Source: Cercozoa sp. M6MM (taxonomy: Eukaryota > Protista > Endomyxa: Ascetosporea). Taken from it: 64,000 bases of DNA. The notes under the pieces are model-generated. The model made no database searches. It was not told the origin of the DNA and saw only the letters and a program-made list of their open reading frames with translations. The stretch lies in NCBI GenBank assembly GCA_040357565.1, contig JBDODJ010000042.1, one strand, 5' to 3'. The translations under genes were made by a program, and so were the position numbers. This document shows, piece after piece, positions 3,001 to 15,765 of this stretch (its first letter is position 1; each line of letters starts with the position of its first letter).

Positions 3001-6000
3001 CCGCGCGGATGAAGAAAACCAAATTCACACAAAATTTAACATTTAATACCAAAGGCACGGTGCTTGCGGCCGCAGCGCGGGTCCAGCAGAATGTTCCAGA
3101 CCTGCTTGCCCGTCCAGAGTGGTACCGGGTGCCAGATGGCCGGTGGTGGCATGTCGATCTGCAATTAGCCAATTTTCTCAAGTTTTTCGCTAATTGGAGA
3201 AAATTTCGGCAAAATTCGCAAATTTCGCGAGGTTTGCAAACCCAGCCGAAATGGAAAACACGAAAGCCAATGTTACGTGTTCTGCGGCGTCGGCAAAATA
3301 GGCGCAGATCTGCATGAACTCGGCACGCGTCAAGAAGACATCCTTGCCTGTGCTCAATCATAAAAATATAGGTATGATCAATATAGGACGGTCAAGGAAT
3401 GATCAATATAGGACGAAGGATAGAATATGAGTACACGTGAGCAGATAGGACGCCGTGATGAAATCCTGCAGCGGCGCCACGATGGGCGCGCCGTTCTTTG
3501 GAGTGATGAAGTTGCGATCCACTCGCATCAGCGTCTTGGCCTCGGCCACGGCTTCGAGCGTTTGCGGCACGTGCAGGTTCATCTGGACACGCACATATTT
3601 GAACGGACGGTTAAAGGTAAGAGTTAAAGGTGAGGGTTAAAGGTGAAAGTTACCTCGTCACCGTCGAAATCGGCGTTGTACGGGTTGCACACGCAGACCT
3701 GCGCAAAGCAGCAAACTGAAGAGCGTCACGCGAAAACAAACCCAAATTCGCTACGTTGAAGCGGAAAGTGCGCCACGGCATCACGCGCACGCGATGTGAC
3801 ATGATACTGATACTGCAAAGCAAAACCGGTATAACTGACACAGACAAATACAATAACTAGACGTGCTCAGTGATCGTACCGATGCAAAGAGGGCTGACGA
3901 TTGAACAGCACCATGTCACCATCGCTGAGGTGCCGTTCCACGATGTCACCCACCTGTGGGGAGGGTAAGAGTATAGGTCAAGGGTGAGGGATGAAGGGTA
4001 AAGCAAAGGCGAAAGGGGTACACGAAGTCCTTCAGCACGCTTCATGCGGTCGCCGTACCTGCAAAGCAAACAAGTGTTTCCACAAGGTACTAGGTACGAG
4101 GTAGAGAGAAGGGTACTTAAGGTATTGCTTCGTGCCGGCGTTGGCATCGTTGCCGCCTCGTCTGTGTTGGTGATAAACAAGCCGGTTAACCCTTTAAGAT
4201 AATGAAAGAAGTAACGTACTGCAGAAAGTTGGCGCCTGGATGCACTTCGGGTCCGTTCTGCACGGCTCGGCGCAGTCGTGCGAGATTGTGTGGCTACAGA
4301 GAGGTACAAATAGTTGCATTGGGACAAATGGACAAATAACTGGTACAGTCACGCGCTCGGGCACAGTGAGTTTCTGCGCGACCTGCAGCGGCACGCCGAC
4401 CTACGAGGTTTTAACACAGAGAATAAATACAGCACAATTGAGATACAGGGAGAAAAAAACTACAACATAATATAAAAAATACAATAAACACAAGCATAAC
4501 TATAAAGAGAAAAAGAAATACAAAAGACAACAAAAAAGCCGACCTCAGTGACGTGCAAGTTCGGGTCGGGTGAGATCACAGCACGCGCAGAGAAGTCGAC
4601 ACGCTTACCCTGTCCATTTGTAAGGTACATTTGGGCCCAAAACATCATACGATTGAACACTGGACAGCTGTACCGACAGATTCCAACGGAAGCGACCAGT
4701 CTTGCCTTTGAGACGTTGCGCCAGTGAGCGGATTCTCTGTCACATGAGGTGTAAGGGGGGGTAAAGTAAGGGGTAAAGGGGAAGTAAGCAATATGGGGTA
4801 TCTGGGAGGCAACTGAAGGAACCTTGGTAGGCTTGACAGCAGGTGGGAAGCCCGGCATGTCGGCATTGAGCAACATGGCCACCTGCTGCTGCAGGAAGTT
4901 CCAGTTCTCCAATAGCGCAGCCGGCGAGGCGCCCTTGCTCTTGAGCTGCTTGAGGTGATTGTTGATGTACACAATGTCCGAGATCTTGATGGTCAGGTCG
5001 TCCTCGTTGCTGCCCGTCGCCGACATCGGCACCGACGGACGAATGCACACCGGTGGTACCACCTGCCAAACCAACTCGACATTTCATCATTCTTTCGAAC
5101 TCATCATTCTTTCGAACTCATCATTCTTTCGAACTCATCATTCTTTCGAACTCATCATTCCAAAAGCGTCAACTTTCTCAATGCAAAAAGCAAAAGCTGC
5201 TACCAGAGTCGAAATGATCAGATCGGCCGGATTGCTCGTCGGCATGCCCTAACGCAGACACTCGCCAGTAAATTCAACTCCAGTCAAGTCAAGTCAAGTC
5301 AACTCCAGTCAACTAAACTGAACAGAACTTAACAAAGTCAAAACAAACCAGAACAGCAGCATCAAGGCGCAGCATGCGACGGAACAAGCGCAGACAGCTG
5401 CATTCAATTTTGTTAGAGCACACCTCTTGATACAATATGAGAAGAGAGCCTACACATCCGGCGTCAAATCGTGCAGACCGCGAGTCTTGAACTTATCCAC
5501 ATCCGGGTTGCTCCGCGCGGCCTAAACCAAACGCATGGTTCAATCATCCCAAGCAGAGTAACGAAACTTAAAGTGATGTACCTCATCGAACTCGGCGAGC
5601 CACTGGGCGCGTTCTTCGCTTTTTTGCAGCGCCTAAATAAAAATTACAAACAAGGTTGTTCAAACAAGTTGGATTGCTCGTTTAAAGCTAATAAACACAC
5701 CTTGCCCGCAAACGGCTCGTGCACGTAGCGGAAGCACGTGCGCAGTTTCTTCACGTTGCTGCAAAAGAAGGTTAGAGAATTTAAAGAAGCGAAAACTGGT
5801 AACTTCTGAAATAAAATGAGAGAAAAGAGGGAAAAGAGCACCCGTTGGTGGCGGCGCAGTGCGGACATTTGCGCACCTTTTTCGACTCTTTCGTGATCGT
5901 AGCCTGACAGGAGAGTTGGAGTGAACTCTCAACTTGAACCCACAGCTATCGCACTGAAACAGTACCAGAATATCGCGACGCCGATCGCGAGTTAAAACCG

Positions 6001-6742
6001 GCGACTGAAGCTGCTTGAGGAACTTGTCGCGCACCGGGTCCTCCAGCAGCAGGCGCGCACATGACTTGCAAATGCACTGCAGGATGCGCAGAATCTCGCG
6101 GTAGTAGCCGACTGTGCCACACAAGTTTAGTGTAGAGAAAGAGCATAGATATGTGATTAAAAGCTACCGTGAAACACGGGAAACTCGAGTCGCACGTGGC
6201 CAAAGTGGCCTAAAGAAATGTGGCATAACCTGTATACACCTTGCATAAAAATAGTCGTACCAACACAGTCCTGGAGGTCCTTGTGACAGGTAGCACATTC
6301 GCCCTTGTTGGTCGAGACGCCCAGACGCGGATCCAGACAACCGTACGGCACCGGGTTGAACGTGCCTATGTACGAACAAAGTGAATTGGAACATTAATGC
6401 GCCGCTGACTTTAGAAAACCTACCCGTCTCGTACATGTCCTTGTTCAGCACCTGCATCTGCGACAGACGACACGCGTCCTCCGACGACATCAGTTTCAGC
6501 GACACGCTCTCGATCTGTCAGACAGACACCGACACAGATGCATACCAACAAACACAGTCTCATCGCTGCAGTACCTGCATAGATGGCATCTCCTCCTTCA
6601 CAAACGGTTTCAACACCGGGTTCTGCTCAAGCACATGCACAAATTAAGCACAGCCATAAGTATGTGGCTTTTGCAACAAGCGTACCTGACGAGCGCGCAT
6701 GGTGGCGCGCTCCTGCTGGCGACGCTCCTCGAATTCGTCCAT
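1..6742 (-). CDS. RPC1: DNA-directed RNA polymerase III largest subunit (RPC1), multi-exon, 3' part runs off the window start
   Basis: Spliced exons give [42 protein letters not shown], catalytic [14 protein letters not shown] (~3570-3705), [62 protein letters not shown] and the absence of Pol I-type insertions fit Pol III. Start ATG at 6742 is inferred. Confidence 0.93.
88..1160 (-). repeat. Intronic TTTAC(C)n arrays (GGGGTAAA-like on + strand) in RPC1
   Basis: Clusters at ~88-131, 258-355, 595-785, 1117-1158; further clusters at ~4750-4800 and 42360-43255. Confidence 0.9.
5085..5160. repeat. 17-bp tandem repeat (catcattctttcgaact) x ~4.5 in an RPC1 intron
   Basis: Exact tandem copies are visible. 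Confidence 0.95.
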
Positions 6743-10446: not shown

Positions 10447-12515
10447 CTAATCGTCGCTCATGATGGTCGTGGAGCGAACAGAACTCTCGGGCGTCAGACT
10501 GAAAGGCACAAAGCAGAACACAGGTGAATCCATAGACACAAGGACACTCCTCCCATACCGCAGAGAGAGCTCGGTCTGCGAGAGGCAGTAGACGCCGCCG
10601 TGGATAGGAGTGCTGTCGGACTTGAACACCTGCGAAAAGGTGCCGTCGTCCTTGATCCAACGCGAGGCACTGCAAGCACACAGGGCGACAATACAATCAT
10701 GACGCAAGCAAGCAGAGTGACTGAGATACTGGTGCAGAGGCGCCGGCATCTTGATGCCACCTGTCGCAAGGGCAAAGGGGGTACAAAACTCAATTTCTAG
10801 AGACAAAGGAACTGAGCTACCGCGGTTGGCGACATACATGTGCATGGCAGCCATCGCAACCTGCATGACTTCGTCCTTGCGCACGTCCATCTGCACATGA
10901 GATATATCAACAGACACCCACCAAAACAGAAAGAAAACAGAAAGGCAGGCAAAGAGCATACGTTGTACTGTTCGAACTGGAAGCGAGCAGGGTTGGTGTT
11001 CGGCAGGACCGTGTAGAACTCCTCGCGCACTGTGCACATACATACGATATGCACACCCTGTCTGGACCAAGATAGCGGAGACAAAGAGTACGCGGTGCGA
11101 GGTCAGGATCACTCTCGCAGTCCACAAAGTACTGACCCGCCGAGCTGCACACATGACACACACACATCGGAGGGGGGGGGGGGGGTGATTTACTCGCGCC
11201 CTAGCGAGAGACCGAGACAGAAACGCACCCTCGGCCAGCACGCGGACCCTTGCACAGCAGCGGCGGACTACGCTGTGACTGTTGCCACATGCACCACCAA
11301 TATTGCAAGAACGCACAGTCAGACAGAGGAAGGCCAGAGAAGGTTACGTTGATCCACAGGTAGCCGTCCACGAGTTCCTTCAGCTCCTCCTTCTGTGCAA
11401 CACATACATACCCACAGGCAAACCGCTATGAGCCCACAATCAACAAACACGCCATACCTCACGGTCATGGGCACCAGTGTCGCTGGCCTTGGTGGAACTA
11501 CCACGGAAGACCACGATGGCCTTGCGCGTGCCCTACACTCACTGCACCGCAGCACAATACATGCTATGTGTGTGCGGCCAGTACCTCGTTGCAGAAGGCA
11601 GCGCACTTGGCGAGCACCTGCACCACCCCTACGAACAAAGGCAAGTTACATGCTATTCGGTCCAGACATGTTTGTGCAGTGGGTGACTGGTACAGTGCGA
11701 CTCGTCCTCTTCGCTCAGCTCGGTGGCAAAGCCGAGACGACGCACGTGGTGCCGGCCGAACATCACGGCAACGCAGACACGGCGACGGCCTTTGCACAAC
11801 ATAAGTTGACATGCATGACCTGTGTACAACAACAGAGGTGGTGCCGAGATACCGTCCTTCAGCGCGACCGAGTCAACGCCTGCAAGCGGCAACGACGTCA
11901 CCGACTGTGTCAAAAGTGTCAGGTCACGGTACTATAATCCGGTGGATGCAGAGCAACAAGGCTACGCGAGGCAGGCGAACATCAGAAGTCGCCACGCCAG
12001 TTTTACCAATGGCCTGCAGGTAAATTTACAGATGCGGCATGCTGTACTAGTTCTCTTCTTTAGTCAGAGAAACCACTGACACACCTGGTCACAAACCGCC
12101 TTGGCAATGGTCGAGACGTTTGCACTGCTGCGACCAACCAGCGACTGCGACATGCATGCACATATACACGCATAGAAACAACTGGAGTGAAACATCACAC
12201 CTTCTTCATGATGAACTGCACGTGAACGGACTTGCGTATGGCCTCTGCGCGAGTAAGTGCGATGAAACTATGTCCATAAGCCACAAAGCGAGCGCACCAT
12301 TGATGGCGTCGGCCGTGAGATCGTCCACGTTGTCGACAACATCGCGCACCGCCAATTTCGACAGCTAGAACGACGCTTTATTCGCCAACGCACCCACAGG
12401 TCGAACTGTAGTTGATGTACCACTTCGCCTCTATCACGCGCAGTGGACTCGTCCGGTCGGTTGCTACGACAGGGGTGGGGGTACACACACGCACACACAC
12501 ACGCACGCACACACG

Positions 12516-12558
<43 letters not shown>

Positions 12559-12609
12559 ACACACACATACACACACATACACACACACACAAACACACAC
12601 AAACACACA

Positions 12610-12659
<50 letters not shown>

Positions 12660-12669
12660 NNNNNNNNNN

Positions 12670-12723
<54 letters not shown>

Positions 12724-15700
12724 CGGGTCAAAACAAGGCAATCAAACGCACCGATCCAAGACGCATAGAGCCACGTGATGCTCCTCTTGGCGTCGTGAGG
12801 CGTCTTTGAGCAGCGCAGGCACCTCCGAGGCACGGCACTCGGCCATGCGCTGGTGGAGAAAATTAAACAAGACATGAGGAGAAAGAAGAACTAGAAATGG
12901 TTTTAAAGAATCCAGTACATCAATTTCCAGTTTGATGCCTTGGTTCCAGTCGCGCGCCTGTCTCTTCAACACGTCTGCCACAAAGCACAGAAGACCGTCA
13001 AGATTAATATCTATAACTACTCACACAGAACGTTACCTTCAACTTCGCGACCGCCACGACCCAGAAAAAAGAGCGACAAGCGGACTTGCAAACGCTGACC
13101 GTCGACGTCGCTCTTGAATCGGAAACTGCAGGGAGGGGCACTCAAGAATTTCCCACAAAAACCACAAGCACATCAATCTTGTTACCTCTTACGAGACTCG
13201 GAACTGTAGATAACACCACGCGGATATAATTATACCGACAGGCATATTAGAACTGACACGAGAACACTTACGGAAGGAACTCCTCGCCGTCAGTGCGCAA
13301 CTTAACCGGCTCGCGCAACTGGCGAGTGGAGACAGTAAGTGCGTTTCGGTCCACCTGGTCGATACAAGATGAAAATAGACGAAACATAGGTGCATGTAGA
13401 ATTGAAAGTACCTCAAGACCAAAGGCTCGGCCAAGCGGCGTCTGCACCTTACCCGTACGTGTGATGACGTCGCACATCGCATTCCAGACTTTTGAAACAA
13501 GCTATCTTTTACCTTCACTCAGTGTGTCAAAAAGAAAGTACCAATGGCGACACGCTTCAGCTTTGGCATGATCTGACGCTCTGCCTTCATGGCGTCAAAC
13601 CGGCTCTGGTCCGCTACAAAGTCATCAATACAAACATATGTACACACATTGGAGGGTCAAATCACCAGCGCTGAAGAGCTGAGACGACAGCGGATGCTGT
13701 AATGCACACAAATGAGTTTGTTGGAACGCCGAAACAGACATGTGCACATACCAGGCAACAGAGCGGGTGGTAAGAACGGCTTTCATCGCGACGCTCCTCG
13801 TAAGCCATCGCCTGCGGACAGTGTGCGTACACAACTACAAGCATACGTAAGAGACAAAAGGTACCGAGCAAGACTTGATCGGACGACCGTAGGTCTCGCT
13901 GAAATACCGTTCATGCGAGATCTCAGTGCCGCGCTTGTCGAACGTCACGTCCTGAACGAGAAGATATTTCAGAAAGAAACACCATGAAAGAGAGCTCAGT
14001 CGATATCAACGACCTACCGTGCCATGCTTTCCATCGATCCCGTTGACGAACACTTGCTTGAAGCGGTGTGCGGCGATGGCCTGAACCCAAAACACATATA
14101 CTCCACCTTTTCAGAAAGCTATCCACAAGAAGGCTGAGGGTACCGTGATCTTGCGATCGCGAAGCTTCTCTTCGAGTGCACGCCCACACTTCTTGCGGAT
14201 TTCGTACAGTGTCTCCTAAAAACGCATGCAAAACACACTTCAACAAAAAACTGAACAGAAATAAGAGATGAGAGGTACATTCGTAACTGTGCGTAGGTTC
14301 AGCCGCAGCGACAGAGCGACGGACCCTTCGCTCACGTTGGCGCCGAGGAACTTAATCTCGACACCAGCTACAGCAATCAATATCAAACTTGACTTAAGCA
14401 AGGAAGCAAAATCACAGAATAACGAATGTACTCCACACGTTTGCCTTCAGACGCTCACCGCCGAACTCGAAATCAAAGGTCGGTGCGTCTTGGTTCACCT
14501 GTACAAGCAGAAATCAAACTTGTCACACAAACAAATACACAACTTAAGAAAAACAAAAAATACCTTCTCGGAGAACCATGTATCACGTAGCTTCACGAGA
14601 GAGTTGTGGTTGCCTTCCTTGATCGTCGAAAGCGAAGCTTCGCGCAGTTCCGAGCTCAGCACAGCCTCGGCCATGACTGTGTGCATACATATTATCTGCA
14701 TAGAAGAGAAAAGAGGTGCGTAAAGTACCGATAAACTCCTGAGGCGCAAGCGCTCCAAGTAGGGCCGACTCAAGGTGCTCGATCGTCGCTTGGTACTCGA
14801 CGCCCTTCATCTCAAACGTTTTCGAGATCGTGTCCTGCAAGCAAAAAACAAATGAATACGAAAAGTGTTTAGTAACAACGATAGCAGAAACGCCACCTCG
14901 AGAGCGTCGCCAATGTAGAGAACCTTGGCCGGAGACGCCAGACGGAAGTTAGAGCGCACCTCGCGCGGAAGCAGGCGGTTTCTGCGAGAAAACATTCACA
15001 ATCACACAAAAAAGCGCGGAGTTTATGAGTGCAGAAATCCTACAGCGAGCGAGCGCAAATGCGGAAGTCCTGCACGGCCGAGTGAGCGCCACCCGACACA
15101 CGCTTGACGGCGAGCGACGCCGTGTTGACCCTGGCTCGCGGATTCAGCTTGATCTTAAAGCAGTTTGTGCCGTTGTCAGGAATGCGGATGCCATAATCCG
15201 AGGCCAGTCGCTCGATCCCCCCGAAGTTGAGACCACCACCGCGTCCAAAGCCTCCGCCTTGTCCACCACGGAAGCCTCCGCGACCACCGTAACGACCACC
15301 ACCATAGCCCCCGCGCGGTCCTTCACGTTCTCTGCGCGGTGGCGGGCTACGGCATACACTGAATTTGAACGCTGGTCGCTCGAGAATCAATACAGCTACC
15401 GGTCGCGAGCGGAATCATTGCGCCGTCCGCGATCGTCTCGACGACTGTCGCGGCTGTCAGAGCTGTAACTGCTTGATGAAGAGAGTAAACAATTTTGCAA
15501 AGTTACTGTTTTTGAAGGATAAACAGCGAAATCAAAGTACTAATCGCGCTCATGACGCGAGTCACGGCGGCTTCCACGGCGATCTTCGCGGCGATCACCA
15601 CGGCGATCCTCGCGGCGATCACCACGGCGATCCTCGCGCACAGAGCGGGTGCGGCTTCGACTGCGACTGCGTCGCCTGAGATTTCAAAACACACAAGCAC

Positions 15701-15765
15701 AAATTCGACGACGGAGAAAGCTCCAGCTGCAAACAGAGGAATCCGACTCACGGGTAGCGGTTCAT
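10447..15765 (-). CDS. Highly divergent Argonaute/Piwi-family protein, >25 exons, predicted non-slicing
   Basis: Motifs occur in the expected order: RS/RD and RGG N-tail; TNCFKIK (N domain); PAZ-like YLLVQDVTFD..ERYFSETYG..YHPLCC; L2 ALTVSTRQLREPVKL; MID VALCVLD..SVHVQFI..QAIGKTG; PIWI LAGVD, RKAIVVFRG, GQYFVD, EEFYTV, DEVMQVAMAAMHMY, GIKMPAPL, GVYCL. Confidence 0.82.
12484..12722. repeat. (CA)n microsatellite with assembly gap, in an Argonaute intron
   Basis: Direct observation. Confidence 0.98.

What the first reader, a model, noticed from the sequence alone, without database searches (positions are those of the whole stretch)
10447..15765. Extremely divergent, predicted slicer-dead Argonaute hidden in >25 small exons
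Seen: ordered N-PAZ-L2-MID-PIWI motifs. In the DEDH tetrad the first Asp is kept (LAGVD, 11872-11874), RDG has become FRG (11500-11508), and PAPxxYAH reads PAPLHHAS after splicing, so the last His is Ser. The KR-x-x-x-R-F and GTxRP PIWI signatures were not found. The exons I traced are open with intact splice sites, so it looks maintained rather than decayed. Inference: a lineage-specific non-cleaving small-RNA effector outside the standard AGO and PIWI clades.
Basis: partly seen in the sequence, partly recalled or inferred. Interest (0 to 1): 0.82.

Follow-up and report, generated by a model that had tools for sequence, protein, structure and literature searches.

The report
Divergent, probably non-cutting Argonaute-like gene
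A marine amoeba carries a real gene of 38 tiny exons, kept intact by selection, that most likely encodes a very divergent Argonaute (small-RNA-guided silencing protein) lacking two of its four cutting residues. Only its PAZ part, not its PIWI part, could be shown statistically here.

Summary
The gene is real and lies on the minus strand at 10447-15765. My model has 38 exons, 927 aa and GT-AG introns of 52-84 nt.

- **Assembly gap:** it lies inside a (TG)n intron, not in coding sequence.
- **Paralogue:** a second copy in the same assembly (contigs C1680 + C802) keeps all 32 exon borders that can be projected onto it. Exons 6-19 are 74% identical with only in-frame indels, against 44% for the introns. 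dN/dS is about 0.1, so the gene is maintained.
all are where stated: D in LAGVD, FRG, and PAPLHHAS after splicing.
- **Argonaute identity, partly shown:** exon 12 matches PAZ (Pfam E 0.02; hhalign P 0.0016 at the PAZ columns). N, L2, MID and PIWI motifs follow in canonical order and spacing.
- **PIWI not shown:** no PIWI match reaches significance exon by exon. A scan of 1.84 billion proteins found no relative.
- **Not done:** the joined protein has no reference, so it was not searched or folded.

In the best alignment the catalytic tetrad reads D, an acidic cluster, G, S, which predicts no slicing.

The scan had already noted a second divergent Argonaute-like gene beside an RdRP on contig C70. 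My tests support that one more strongly. This is a new member of a known kind, of moderate interest.

The parts
10447..15765 (-). Whole gene: 38 exons, 927 codons, ATG at 15765-15763, stop TAG at 10449-10447
   Evidence: Splice-aware dynamic-programming model. Exons 2, 4-11 and 13-37 are confirmed as conserved islands in the paralogue; exon 12 is scrambled there.
15226..15765 (-). Low-complexity N-terminal tail: RS-rich and RD/RE-repeat exon 2 (15541-15675), Ser/Asp/Arg-rich exon 3 (15400-15468) and the RGG repeats at the start of exon 4. Exon 1 (15752-15765, 14 nt) is uncertain.
   Evidence: Translations. The paralogue on C1680 keeps exon 2 and a shorter RGG stretch, but exon 1 does not align.
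15103..15183 (-). Start of the N-domain-like part (IPDNGTNCFKIKLN...), aligned to the RPxxGxxGxxixLxaN motif that opens eukaryotic Argonaute N domains
   Evidence: Banded profile alignment, 14.3 bits at profile columns 71-93. 75% identical in the paralogue.
13865..13951 (-). Exon 12: PAZ core (DKRGTEISHERYFSETYGRPIK)
   Evidence: Pfam PAZ E 0.023 and 0.051. hhalign P 0.0016 at columns 357-378 of 918. Best non-low-complexity match to the C70 gene's PAZ exon.
13272..13488 (-). Exons 16-17: L2-like linker
   Evidence: The hhalign best hits of these two adjacent exons are contiguous on the profile: 438-457, then 458-474.
11966..12849 (-). Exons 21-26: MID-like part (HHVALCVLD strand; ...VQF...ANVSTIAKAAIGKTG matching tQC...aNvaLKiNvKlgG)
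   Evidence: Banded alignments at profile columns 560-575 and 611-625. These are weak scores individually.
12464..12751 (-). Intron 21 (288 nt), a (TG)n microsatellite that holds the assembly gap at 12660-12669
   Evidence: Donor cgGTGCGTTT, acceptor TGTCGTAG, 77% TG-type repeat or N. The paralogue has a 136-nt intron between the same exons.
10559..11904 (-). Exons 27-37: PIWI-like part
   Evidence: Collinear motif matches to profile columns 648-865. hhalign of P0001 lands at columns 835-863 with P 0.17. There is no significant family hit.
11872..11874 (-). D690 in LAGVD, aligned to the first catalytic Asp (GaDVtH)
11701..11733 (-). Acidic cluster GFATELSEEDE, the candidate position of the glutamate finger (exact residue uncertain by about 2-3 positions)
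   Evidence: Counted back from the exon 29 match at profile columns 699-705. This is an inference.
11500..11508 (-). F752-R753-G754. In the best register FRGSS aligns with YRDGV, so Gly (11500-11502) sits in the second catalytic Asp column.
   Evidence: KAIVVFR aligned to eriifYR, 10.1 bits; coordinates.
10663..10746 (-). PAPLHHAS across intron 36. Ser876 (10663-10665) sits in the catalytic His column of PAPxYYAH.
   Evidence: NCBI's model of the paralogue uses the same junction.
10499..10820 (-). Exons 36 and 37 with the three flanking introns 35, 36 and 37 (10761-10820, 10670-10729, 10499-10558). Each intron is exactly 60 nt, in frame and free of stops.
   Evidence: Their codon score (-0.38 to -0.39) and GC3 (0.35-0.55) are intron-like, against exons at +0.30 ± 0.12 and GC3 0.71. 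Read-through of intron 36 would give QYLSH, which resembles YYAH.
10447..10498 (-). Exon 38, the uncertain last exon. The same stop codon is reached whether intron 37 is spliced or retained.
   Evidence: Not conserved in the paralogue (42% identity). Codon score -0.15.

Best explanation
The locus is one expressed-type, selectively maintained gene of the rhizarian amoeba Lemnamoeba sinaloensis (strain M6MM). It most likely encodes a very divergent Argonaute-family protein.

**Inferred layout**
- A disordered Arg-rich tail (RS, RD/RE and RGG repeats).
- An N-like domain, a recognisable PAZ core and an L2 linker.
- A remodelled MID and a degenerate PIWI (RNase H-like) domain.

**Inferred mechanism**
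- It binds a small guide RNA, with PAZ holding the 3' end.
- It acts without cutting the target. It would recruit partners or block translation or transcription, because two of the four catalytic positions (the second Asp and the His) hold Gly and Ser.
- The Arg-rich tail would give RNA or chromatin contacts, or nuclear or granule localisation, as in other Argonautes.

**What is shown and what is inferred**
- Shown: gene structure, purifying selection, PAZ similarity, and the residues at the stated coordinates.
- Inferred: the PIWI fold, small-RNA binding and the non-slicing mode of action.
For: - **Gene model:** 38 open exons with GT-AG introns.
- **Paralogue on C802/C1680:** it keeps 32 of 32 projected borders. 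Exons are 74% identical against 44% for introns, and exon indels occur only in threes.
- **Selection:** dN/dS is 0.09-0.11.
- **PAZ:** Pfam E 0.023 and 0.051. That is a per-family P of about 1e-6 before correcting for roughly 40 pieces tested. hhalign gives P 0.0016 exactly at the PAZ columns.
- **Spacing:** the distance from the PAZ motif to the PAP motif equals the canonical one (1.02 profile columns per residue).
- **Collinearity:** Spearman rho 0.44, p 0.011. The six best-scoring exons in hhalign give rho 0.94. Exon-chain score z is 3-4.7 against shuffles.
- **C-terminal fragment:** spliced P0001 aligns to DE..Q.....H.YV......PAP at columns 835-863.
- **Not a Dicer:** there is no RNase III signal in this gene.
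- **Second family member:** a gene on C70 beside the genome's only RdRP hit shows clearer Argonaute collinearity (rho 0.72, p 1.5e-4; Fisher p 0.005). Its best matches to this gene are the PAZ and PAP motifs.
- **Known feature of the family:** Arg-rich, RGG or DR-rich N-terminal regions are described for Argonautes (PMC6796981, PMC2877743, PMC8421154).
Against: - No PIWI, ArgoN, L1, L2 or MID family hit on any stop-free piece. Pfam Piwi (PF02171) and my own profile of 26 eukaryotic Argonautes found nothing in the whole genome.
- phmmer against the PDB found nothing.
- A full scan of 1.84 billion proteins with the PIWI C-terminal piece found only the paralogue's fragment.
- hhalign best hits over all 32 exons are not collinear (rho 0.10). 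Their combined P is 0.21.
- The banded sum of exon scores is not above shuffles (z 1.1).
- No aromatic residue is visible where the MID 5'-end-stacking Tyr should be. I saw this by eye only.
- No transcript evidence was available.
Confidence: 0.75

Rival explanations
1. It is a PAZ-bearing RNA-binding protein whose C-terminal half is not a PIWI domain. On this view the PIWI-like motifs (GVD, FRG, PAP) are chance resemblances picked out by eye.
For: - No significant PIWI signal in any exon-wise test.
- Spurious Pfam hits of similar strength occur on other pieces, such as PSCyt2 at E 0.0057 and Kelch at E 0.1.
Against: - To my knowledge, PAZ is found in Argonaute/Piwi and Dicer proteins, and this gene has no RNase III signal.
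- Motif order and spacing fit the canonical layout.
- The C-terminal fragment's best hhalign alignment falls exactly at the expected columns.
- The C70 relative has better PIWI support: exons 29 and 30 give P 0.008 and 0.01 and are contiguous at columns 822-863.
Confidence: 0.13
2. It is an Argonaute that still cuts, either through non-canonical residues or through an isoform that retains intron 36. Read-through of that intron gives PAPLHQYLSH, which puts a His in a YxxH context.
For: - hhalign aligns the unspliced piece to PaP--aYYAhLva~Rar with P 0.051.
- Introns 35-37 are all 60 nt, in frame and stop-free, a coincidence I estimate at about 0.002.
- Two His residues precede the Ser in the spliced form.
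Against: - Codon score and GC3 of the three stretches are clearly intron-like.
- NCBI's gene predictor splices introns 35 and 36 the same way.
- The second Asp is missing in either isoform.
Confidence: 0.05
3. It is a decaying or non-functional duplicate.
For: - The paralogue on C802 has an in-frame stop and a scrambled sequence in its PAZ exon.
- The last exon is not conserved.
Against: - The window copy is open through all 38 exons with intact splice sites.
- dN/dS is 0.09-0.11 over 311-339 codons.
- The defect is in the other copy, not in this one.
Confidence: 0.04

Closest known systems
Eukaryotic Argonaute family (AGO clade, e.g. human AGO2, Arabidopsis AGO1)
   Same: - Overall length and the order N, PAZ, L2, MID, PIWI.
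- The PAZ YF..Y core and the first catalytic Asp in a G.D strand.
- The H.YV......PAP motif near the C-terminus.
- An Arg/Gly-rich N-terminal extension.
   Different: - Sequence similarity is below detection for every domain but PAZ.
- YRDGVSEGQF, KRHHTRLF and GTSRP are absent or degenerate.
- The MID pocket residues are not recognisable.
Catalytically inactive Argonautes (human AGO1/AGO4, many C. elegans WAGOs)
   Same: Loss of tetrad residues in a protein otherwise maintained by selection. Expected action is by recruiting partners rather than by slicing.
   Different: Those proteins are readily recognised by Pfam Piwi. This one is not. Whether it groups with any of their clades is unknown.
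Protist Argonautes with repetitive charged N-terminal regions (Entamoeba EhAgo2-2 DR-rich region, PMC6796981; Toxoplasma Tg-AGO RGG, PMC2877743)
   Same: Repeated DR/RD or RGG stretches ahead of the Argonaute core. In Entamoeba the DR-rich region controls nuclear localisation.
   Different: Here three kinds of repeat (RS, RD/RE, RGG) follow one another. Their function is untested.
Plasmodiophora brassicae PbAGO1 and PbAGO2 (the Rhizaria Argonautes studied so far, PMC13547706)
   Same: Same supergroup. That species also lacks a recognisable Dicer, and RNase III content is likewise sparse (a Drosha-like protein there; one weak hit here).
   Different: The Pb proteins are canonical four-domain AGO-clade members with the DDH residues. 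The Lemnamoeba genes are not detectable by the same models and lack two of the residues.
The Argonaute-like gene on contig C70 of the same genome, beside an RdRP
   Same: - The same PAZ and PAP motifs.
- The same loss of the second Asp (LRG) and of the His (Leu).
- An Arg-rich N-terminus.
   Different: - Otherwise almost no sequence similarity.
- It has larger exons and different intron positions.
- It has better statistical support as an Argonaute.

Membership tests
Argonaute/Piwi superfamily | PAZ domain in the first half of the protein | tested here: met
   - Pfam PF02170 E 0.023 and 0.051, at 14-15 bits. This is below the 28.8-bit gathering score, as expected for a 29-residue exon.
- hhalign P 0.0016 at columns 357-378 of the 26-Argonaute profile.
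Argonaute/Piwi superfamily | PIWI (RNase H-like) domain in the C-terminal third | tested here: inconclusive
   - No PF02171 hit exon by exon or in the genome scan.
- hhalign of spliced P0001 lands at the right columns, but with P 0.17.
- Motif matches are collinear but individually weak.
- The joined model could not be searched or folded.
Argonaute/Piwi superfamily | MID domain with a 5'-phosphate pocket (Y-K-Q-K) | tested here: inconclusive
   - Only short matches: VALCVLD, VQF, ANV...KTG.
- No aromatic residue is seen where the Tyr should be (by eye).
- A structure is needed.
Argonaute/Piwi superfamily | Canonical domain order and spacing along one polypeptide | tested here: met
   - PAZ-to-PAP spacing ratio 1.02.
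- Spearman rho 0.44, p 0.011.
- The hhalign version over all exons is not significant.
Slicer-competent Argonaute | DEDH (or DEDD) tetrad complete | tested here: not met
   - Column 650 holds D.
- Column 690 falls near the acidic cluster ELSEEDE.
- Column 860 holds S.
- This rests on weak alignments, but no register restores the second Asp.
Dicer | RNase III domains next to PAZ | tested here: not met
   PF00636 scan of the genome: the only hit is on contig C320, none in this window.
AGO, PIWI, WAGO or trypanosomatid clades | Placement in a tree of PIWI domains | not testable with these tools
   A tree needs the joined protein and an alignable PIWI domain. Not attempted.

The most novel reading that the evidence does not exclude
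Lemnamoeba has no canonical Argonaute at all. Its only Argonautes would be a deep, lineage-specific set of tetrad-deficient proteins: this gene, its partly converted paralogue and the C70 gene. They would work with the genome's single RdRP-helicase in a silencing pathway that needs neither slicing nor a canonical Dicer. That would make a third style of RNAi in Rhizaria beside the canonical-AGO/Drosha-like one of Plasmodiophora.
Probability: 0.3. Interest if true: 0.7.

Novelty: new member of a known kind. Interest (0 to 1): 0.5.

Why it matters
RNA silencing in Rhizaria is almost unstudied. The one characterised case, Plasmodiophora (PMC13547706), uses canonical, slicer-competent AGOs.

In this free-living relative the only detectable candidates are so divergent that standard domain models miss them, and they lack catalytic residues. 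That would show how far the Argonaute scaffold can drift while staying under selection.

It also warns that reports of 'no Argonaute found' in intron-rich protist genomes may be false negatives. The Lemnamoeba genome paper does not mention Argonaute, Dicer or RNAi. NCBI annotates only a 102-aa 'hypothetical protein' fragment of the paralogue.

Tried and rejected
**Gene modelling**
- A model that simply maximises open length read through introns and was discarded.
I used coordinates only from then on.

**Searches that found nothing useful**
- tblastx of this gene against the C70 gene gave only microsatellite noise.
- Pfam on 20 stop-free pieces found PAZ only.
- PDB phmmer found nothing.
- The ESM Atlas, tried twice, found nothing.
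- The big phmmer search found only P0001 and two repeat proteins.
- A degenerate RDGVSEGQ pattern in the genome gave only low-complexity hits, checked on C2087 and C82.

**Attempts to reach a long annotated protein**
- A word search with a scaffold-plus-fragments alignment (A2) scored nothing. That was a wasted search.
- A word search with the Argonaute alignment A1 returned only plant AGO1/AGO10 in the rows listed and added no diversity.

**Weak or null statistics**
- The banded exon-score sum was not above shuffles.

**Readings considered and rejected**
- Exon 28 (GRHHVRRLGF) as the KRHHTRLF strand. Its position, 10 residues after GVD and before FRG, fits the second strand (SIAAVVAS) instead.
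- Introns 35-37 as coding sequence.

**Left out**
- Search, profile comparison, folding and phylogeny of the joined 927-aa model were left out, because the model has no reference. Only exon-by-exon tests and tests of exon order were run.

**Human sequence**
- I took none of the metagenome contigs for human.
- As a precaution I left unused and uninspected the ORFs whose length and layout resemble animal AGOs: L041, L059, L064, L109, L112 and L121.
Full report
**Organism**

Earlier notes of this scan name the genome as the marine amoeba Lemnamoeba sinaloensis M6MM. I checked this two ways.
- A protein fragment encoded by a paralogue in this assembly is NCBI MES1915131.1, 'Cercozoa sp. M6MM'.
- The genome paper equates M6MM with L. 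sinaloensis (Rhizaria, Apofilosa). It reports about 13 introns per gene, averaging 82 bp, with 99.5% GT/AG (PMC13746701).
- That paper does not mention Argonaute, Dicer or RNAi.

**Gene model**

The coding strand is minus. I wrote a splice-aware dynamic programme. It uses a codon log-odds score and donor and acceptor weight matrices, trained iteratively on this locus, and allows only GT-AG introns. One stretch was revised by hand. The revised model scores 395.1 against 398.1 for the automatic one, but it has normal intron lengths.

The result is 38 exons and 927 codons. Exons in window coordinates (high-low):

| Exon | Coordinates | Exon | Coordinates | Exon | Coordinates |
|---|---|---|---|---|---|
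| 1 | 15765-15752 | 14 | 13696-13666 | 27 | 11904-11853 |
| 2 | 15675-15541 | 15 | 13613-13542 | 28 | 11789-11694 |
| 3 | 15468-15400 | 16 | 13488-13412 | 29 | 11628-11585 |
| 4 | 15346-15044 | 17 | 13354-13272 | 30 | 11532-11458 |
| 5 | 14981-14897 | 18 | 13203-13186 | 31 | 11392-11348 |
| 6 | 14834-14729 | 19 | 13125-13037 | 32 | 11278-11229 |
| 7 | 14676-14564 | 20 | 12974-12919 | 33 | 11144-11092 |
| 8 | 14498-14432 | 21 | 12849-12752 | 34 | 11029-10962 |
| 9 | 14367-14279 | 22 | 12463-12421 | 35 | 10890-10821 |
| 10 | 14215-14144 | 23 | 12364-12298 | 36 | 10760-10730 |
| 11 | 14080-14018 | 24 | 12244-12201 | 37 | 10669-10559 |
| 12 | 13951-13865 | 25 | 12144-12097 | 38 | 10498-10447 |
| 13 | 13811-13752 | 26 | 12013-11966 | | |

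**The assembly gap**

- The gap at 12660-12669 lies inside intron 21 (12751-12464, 288 nt as assembled). The intron is 77% TG-type repeat or N, with donor cgGTGCGTTT and acceptor TGTCGTAG.
- Exon 21 ends in phase 2 and exon 22 completes the codon, so the frame does not depend on the gap's length.
- In the paralogue the two exons have the same borders and are separated by 136 nt, with no extra exon.

**Independent check from a paralogue**

- A full phmmer scan of 1.84 billion representative proteins with the stop-free piece 10450-10893 found one true hit, P0001. That piece holds exons 35-38 and three in-frame introns.
- P0001 is 102 aa and 88% identical. It is NCBI's prediction on contig C802 of this same assembly.
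- C802 (6019 bp) is collinear with exons 6-37. Contig C1680 carries the paralogue's exons 2, 4 and 5.
- Projecting my exons onto C802, all 32 have AG before and GT after.
- In exons 6-19, identity is 74% with 12 gapped bases, all in runs of three. The introns between them are at 44%, which is alignment noise, with 140 gapped bases.
- The tiny exons 14 (31 nt) and 18 (18 nt) stand out as conserved islands, so they are real.
- Nei-Gojobori estimates for exons 6-19: dN 0.18, dS 1.64, ratio 0.11. Without exon 12 the ratio is 0.09. Both copies have therefore been under purifying selection.
- From exon 20 to exon 37 the copies are 95-100% identical, including most introns (dS 0.07). Similarity stops abruptly at intron 37. 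This looks like a gene-conversion tract over the MID-PIWI half.
- The C802 copy has a scrambled PAZ exon with an in-frame stop. The defective copy, if there is one, is that one and not the window's.

All are where stated.
- LAGVD has D690 at 11872-11874.
- FRG is at 11500-11508.
- PAPLHHAS is created by the exon 36-37 junction. NCBI's model uses the same junction.

**Is it an Argonaute?**

Each stop-free piece and each exon was searched by reference.
- Pfam finds only PAZ, on exon 12: E 0.023 for the 56-aa piece and 0.051 for the 29-aa exon.
- No Piwi, ArgoN, L1, L2 or MID hit appears. The genome-wide Piwi scan is empty. PDB phmmer is empty.

To obtain an independent profile I collected metagenome contigs that carry the back-translated YRDGVSEGQF motif. 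I took 26 long intronless ORFs of at least 890 aa, with median pairwise identity 34%, and aligned them as A1. A word search with A1 returns plant AGO1/AGO10 proteins carrying the full Pfam Argonaute domain set, so A1 is a genuine Argonaute profile.

Exon by exon against A1 with hhalign:
- Exon 12 scores P 0.0016 at columns 357-378, the PAZ core.
- Exons 16 and 17 land contiguously at 438-457 and 458-474.
- Exons 34 and 35 land at 820-831 and 836-850.
- Exon 30 lands at 721-727.
- Most other exons hit elsewhere. Over all 32 exons the rank correlation is 0.10 and the Fisher P is 0.21. Among the six exons with P < 0.3 the correlation is 0.94.

With my own profile scoring:
- Best-hit position correlates with exon order (rho 0.44, p 0.011; shuffled null 0.03 ± 0.18).
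- A collinear exon-chain score exceeds shuffles by z 3.0-4.7 in four of five settings and by 1.6 in the strictest. It is not robust.
- A banded sum of scores is not significant (z 1.1).
- The spacing from the PAZ motif to the PAP motif equals the canonical spacing (1.02 columns per residue).
- The spliced fragment P0001 aligns KDEVMQVAMAAMHMYVANRGGIKMPAPLH to AD.LQ.LT..Lch.Y.RcTRSVSipaPaY at columns 835-863, with P 0.17.

My reading is this.
- PAZ is supported at roughly 1e-4 to 1e-3 after allowing for the pieces tested.
- As far as I know, PAZ occurs in Argonaute/Piwi and Dicer proteins only, and this gene has no RNase III signal.
- Layout and spacing fit an Argonaute. The PIWI domain is suggested but not demonstrated.
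- Exons of about 24 residues give these tests little power.

Searching, folding or treeing the joined 927-aa model was left out, because the model has no reference.

**A second family member**

- Contig C70 carries the genome's only RdRP hit.
- On the other strand of C70 is a 31-exon gene of about 913 codons in my model.
- Its exons are larger and its Argonaute signal is clearer: rank correlation 0.72 (p 1.5e-4) and Fisher P 0.005.
- PAZ exon 16 gives P 0.002. PIWI exons 29 and 30 give P 0.008 and 0.01 and are contiguous at columns 822-863.
- The best non-low-complexity matches between the two genes are the PAZ core and the PAP motif.
- It reads LRG and PAPLFTAL at the second-Asp and His positions.

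**No canonical Argonaute found**

No canonical Argonaute exon was found in the assembly with the A1 profile, with Pfam Piwi or with a degenerate RDGVSEGQ pattern. The sensitivity of these scans in a genome of tiny exons is unknown.

**Catalytic tetrad (banded alignments)**

| Profile column | Canonical residue | This gene | Basis |
|---|---|---|---|
| 650 | first Asp | D690 | GVD aligned to GaD |
| 690 | Glu finger | within ELSEEDE | counted back from the exon 29 match; inference, ±2-3 residues |
| 860 | His | S876 | PAPLHHAS aligned to PaPayYAh |

Two of the four positions are lost in any register. If the fold is PIWI, slicing is not expected.

One caveat concerns introns 35, 36 and 37.
- Each is exactly 60 nt, in frame and stop-free.
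- The read-through of intron 36 gives QYLSH, which hhalign aligns to YYAH (P 0.051).
- A codon model trained only on exons 4-34 scores these stretches as introns: -0.38 to -0.39 with GC3 0.35-0.55. Exons score +0.30 ± 0.12, and exons 35-37 have GC3 0.83-0.89.

**Context**

- Downstream on the same strand lies an Rpb1-type RNA polymerase large-subunit gene.
- No silencing gene was recognised next to this locus.
- One weak RNase III hit exists elsewhere, at C320.

**Comparison and novelty**

- Tetrad-deficient Argonautes and Arg-rich or DR-rich N-terminal extensions are well known (PMC6796981, PMC2877743, PMC8421154).
- The rhizarian Plasmodiophora has two canonical DDH Argonautes (PMC13547706).
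- What is unusual here is the degree of divergence combined with strong purifying selection, and the apparent absence of a canonical Argonaute.
- I file it as a new member of a known kind, with a 0.3 chance that it belongs to a deep rhizarian-specific set that is this amoeba's whole Argonaute complement.

**Limits**

- No transcript data were available.
- The 5' end (exon 1) and the last exon are uncertain.

Noticed in passing
G000 contigs C802 (L008:58-4182) and C1680 (L130), against window 10559-15675: A paralogue of the gene is split over two small contigs. Its identity to the window copy is mosaic: 74% in exons 6-19 with noise-level introns, then 95-100% from exon 20 to exon 37 including introns, ending sharply at intron 37. 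This looks like a gene-conversion tract over the MID-PIWI half.
   Followed up: partly
L008:926-1015 (C802), the counterpart of window 13865-13951: The paralogue's PAZ-core exon is scrambled and carries an in-frame stop. Every other projected exon is intact. It may be a PAZ-less variant or a dying copy.
   Followed up: partly
window 10499-10558, 10670-10729, 10761-10820: Three consecutive introns are each exactly 60 nt, in frame and free of stops. The read-through of the middle one would restore a His in a YxxH context. By codon score they are introns, but regulated intron retention cannot be excluded.
   Followed up: partly
L003:1678-6604 (G000 C70:42678-47604, + strand): A second, very different Argonaute-like gene (31 exons in my model) lies beside the genome's only RdRP hit (C70:39128-39211, - strand). 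Its exon-wise collinearity with an Argonaute profile is significant (rho 0.72, p 1.5e-4).
   Followed up: partly
window 5663-6124 (-): An open stretch matches RNA polymerase Rpb1 domain 1 (Pfam E 1.9e-4). A large-subunit RNA polymerase gene therefore lies just downstream of the Argonaute-like gene on the same strand. Which polymerase it is was not determined.
   Followed up: no
G000 C320:10124-10189 (-): This is the only RNase III (PF00636) hit in the assembly: 15.9 bits, or 29.2 with neighbouring pieces in the frame. It is a candidate Dicer- or Drosha-like gene.
   Followed up: no
window 12224-12777 (-), model residues about 588-650: Between the VALCVLD strand and the VQF/ANV...KTG motifs there is an insertion of about 20 residues. 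No aromatic residue is seen where the MID Tyr that stacks on the guide's 5' base should be. The 5'-end pocket may be remodelled (judged by eye only).
   Followed up: no
window 15541-15675 (-): Exon 2 encodes RSRSRSR followed by three tandem EDRRGDRR units. The paralogue keeps the type of repeat but not the exact units. It resembles the DR-rich region that controls nuclear localisation of an Entamoeba Argonaute (PMC6796981).
   Followed up: no
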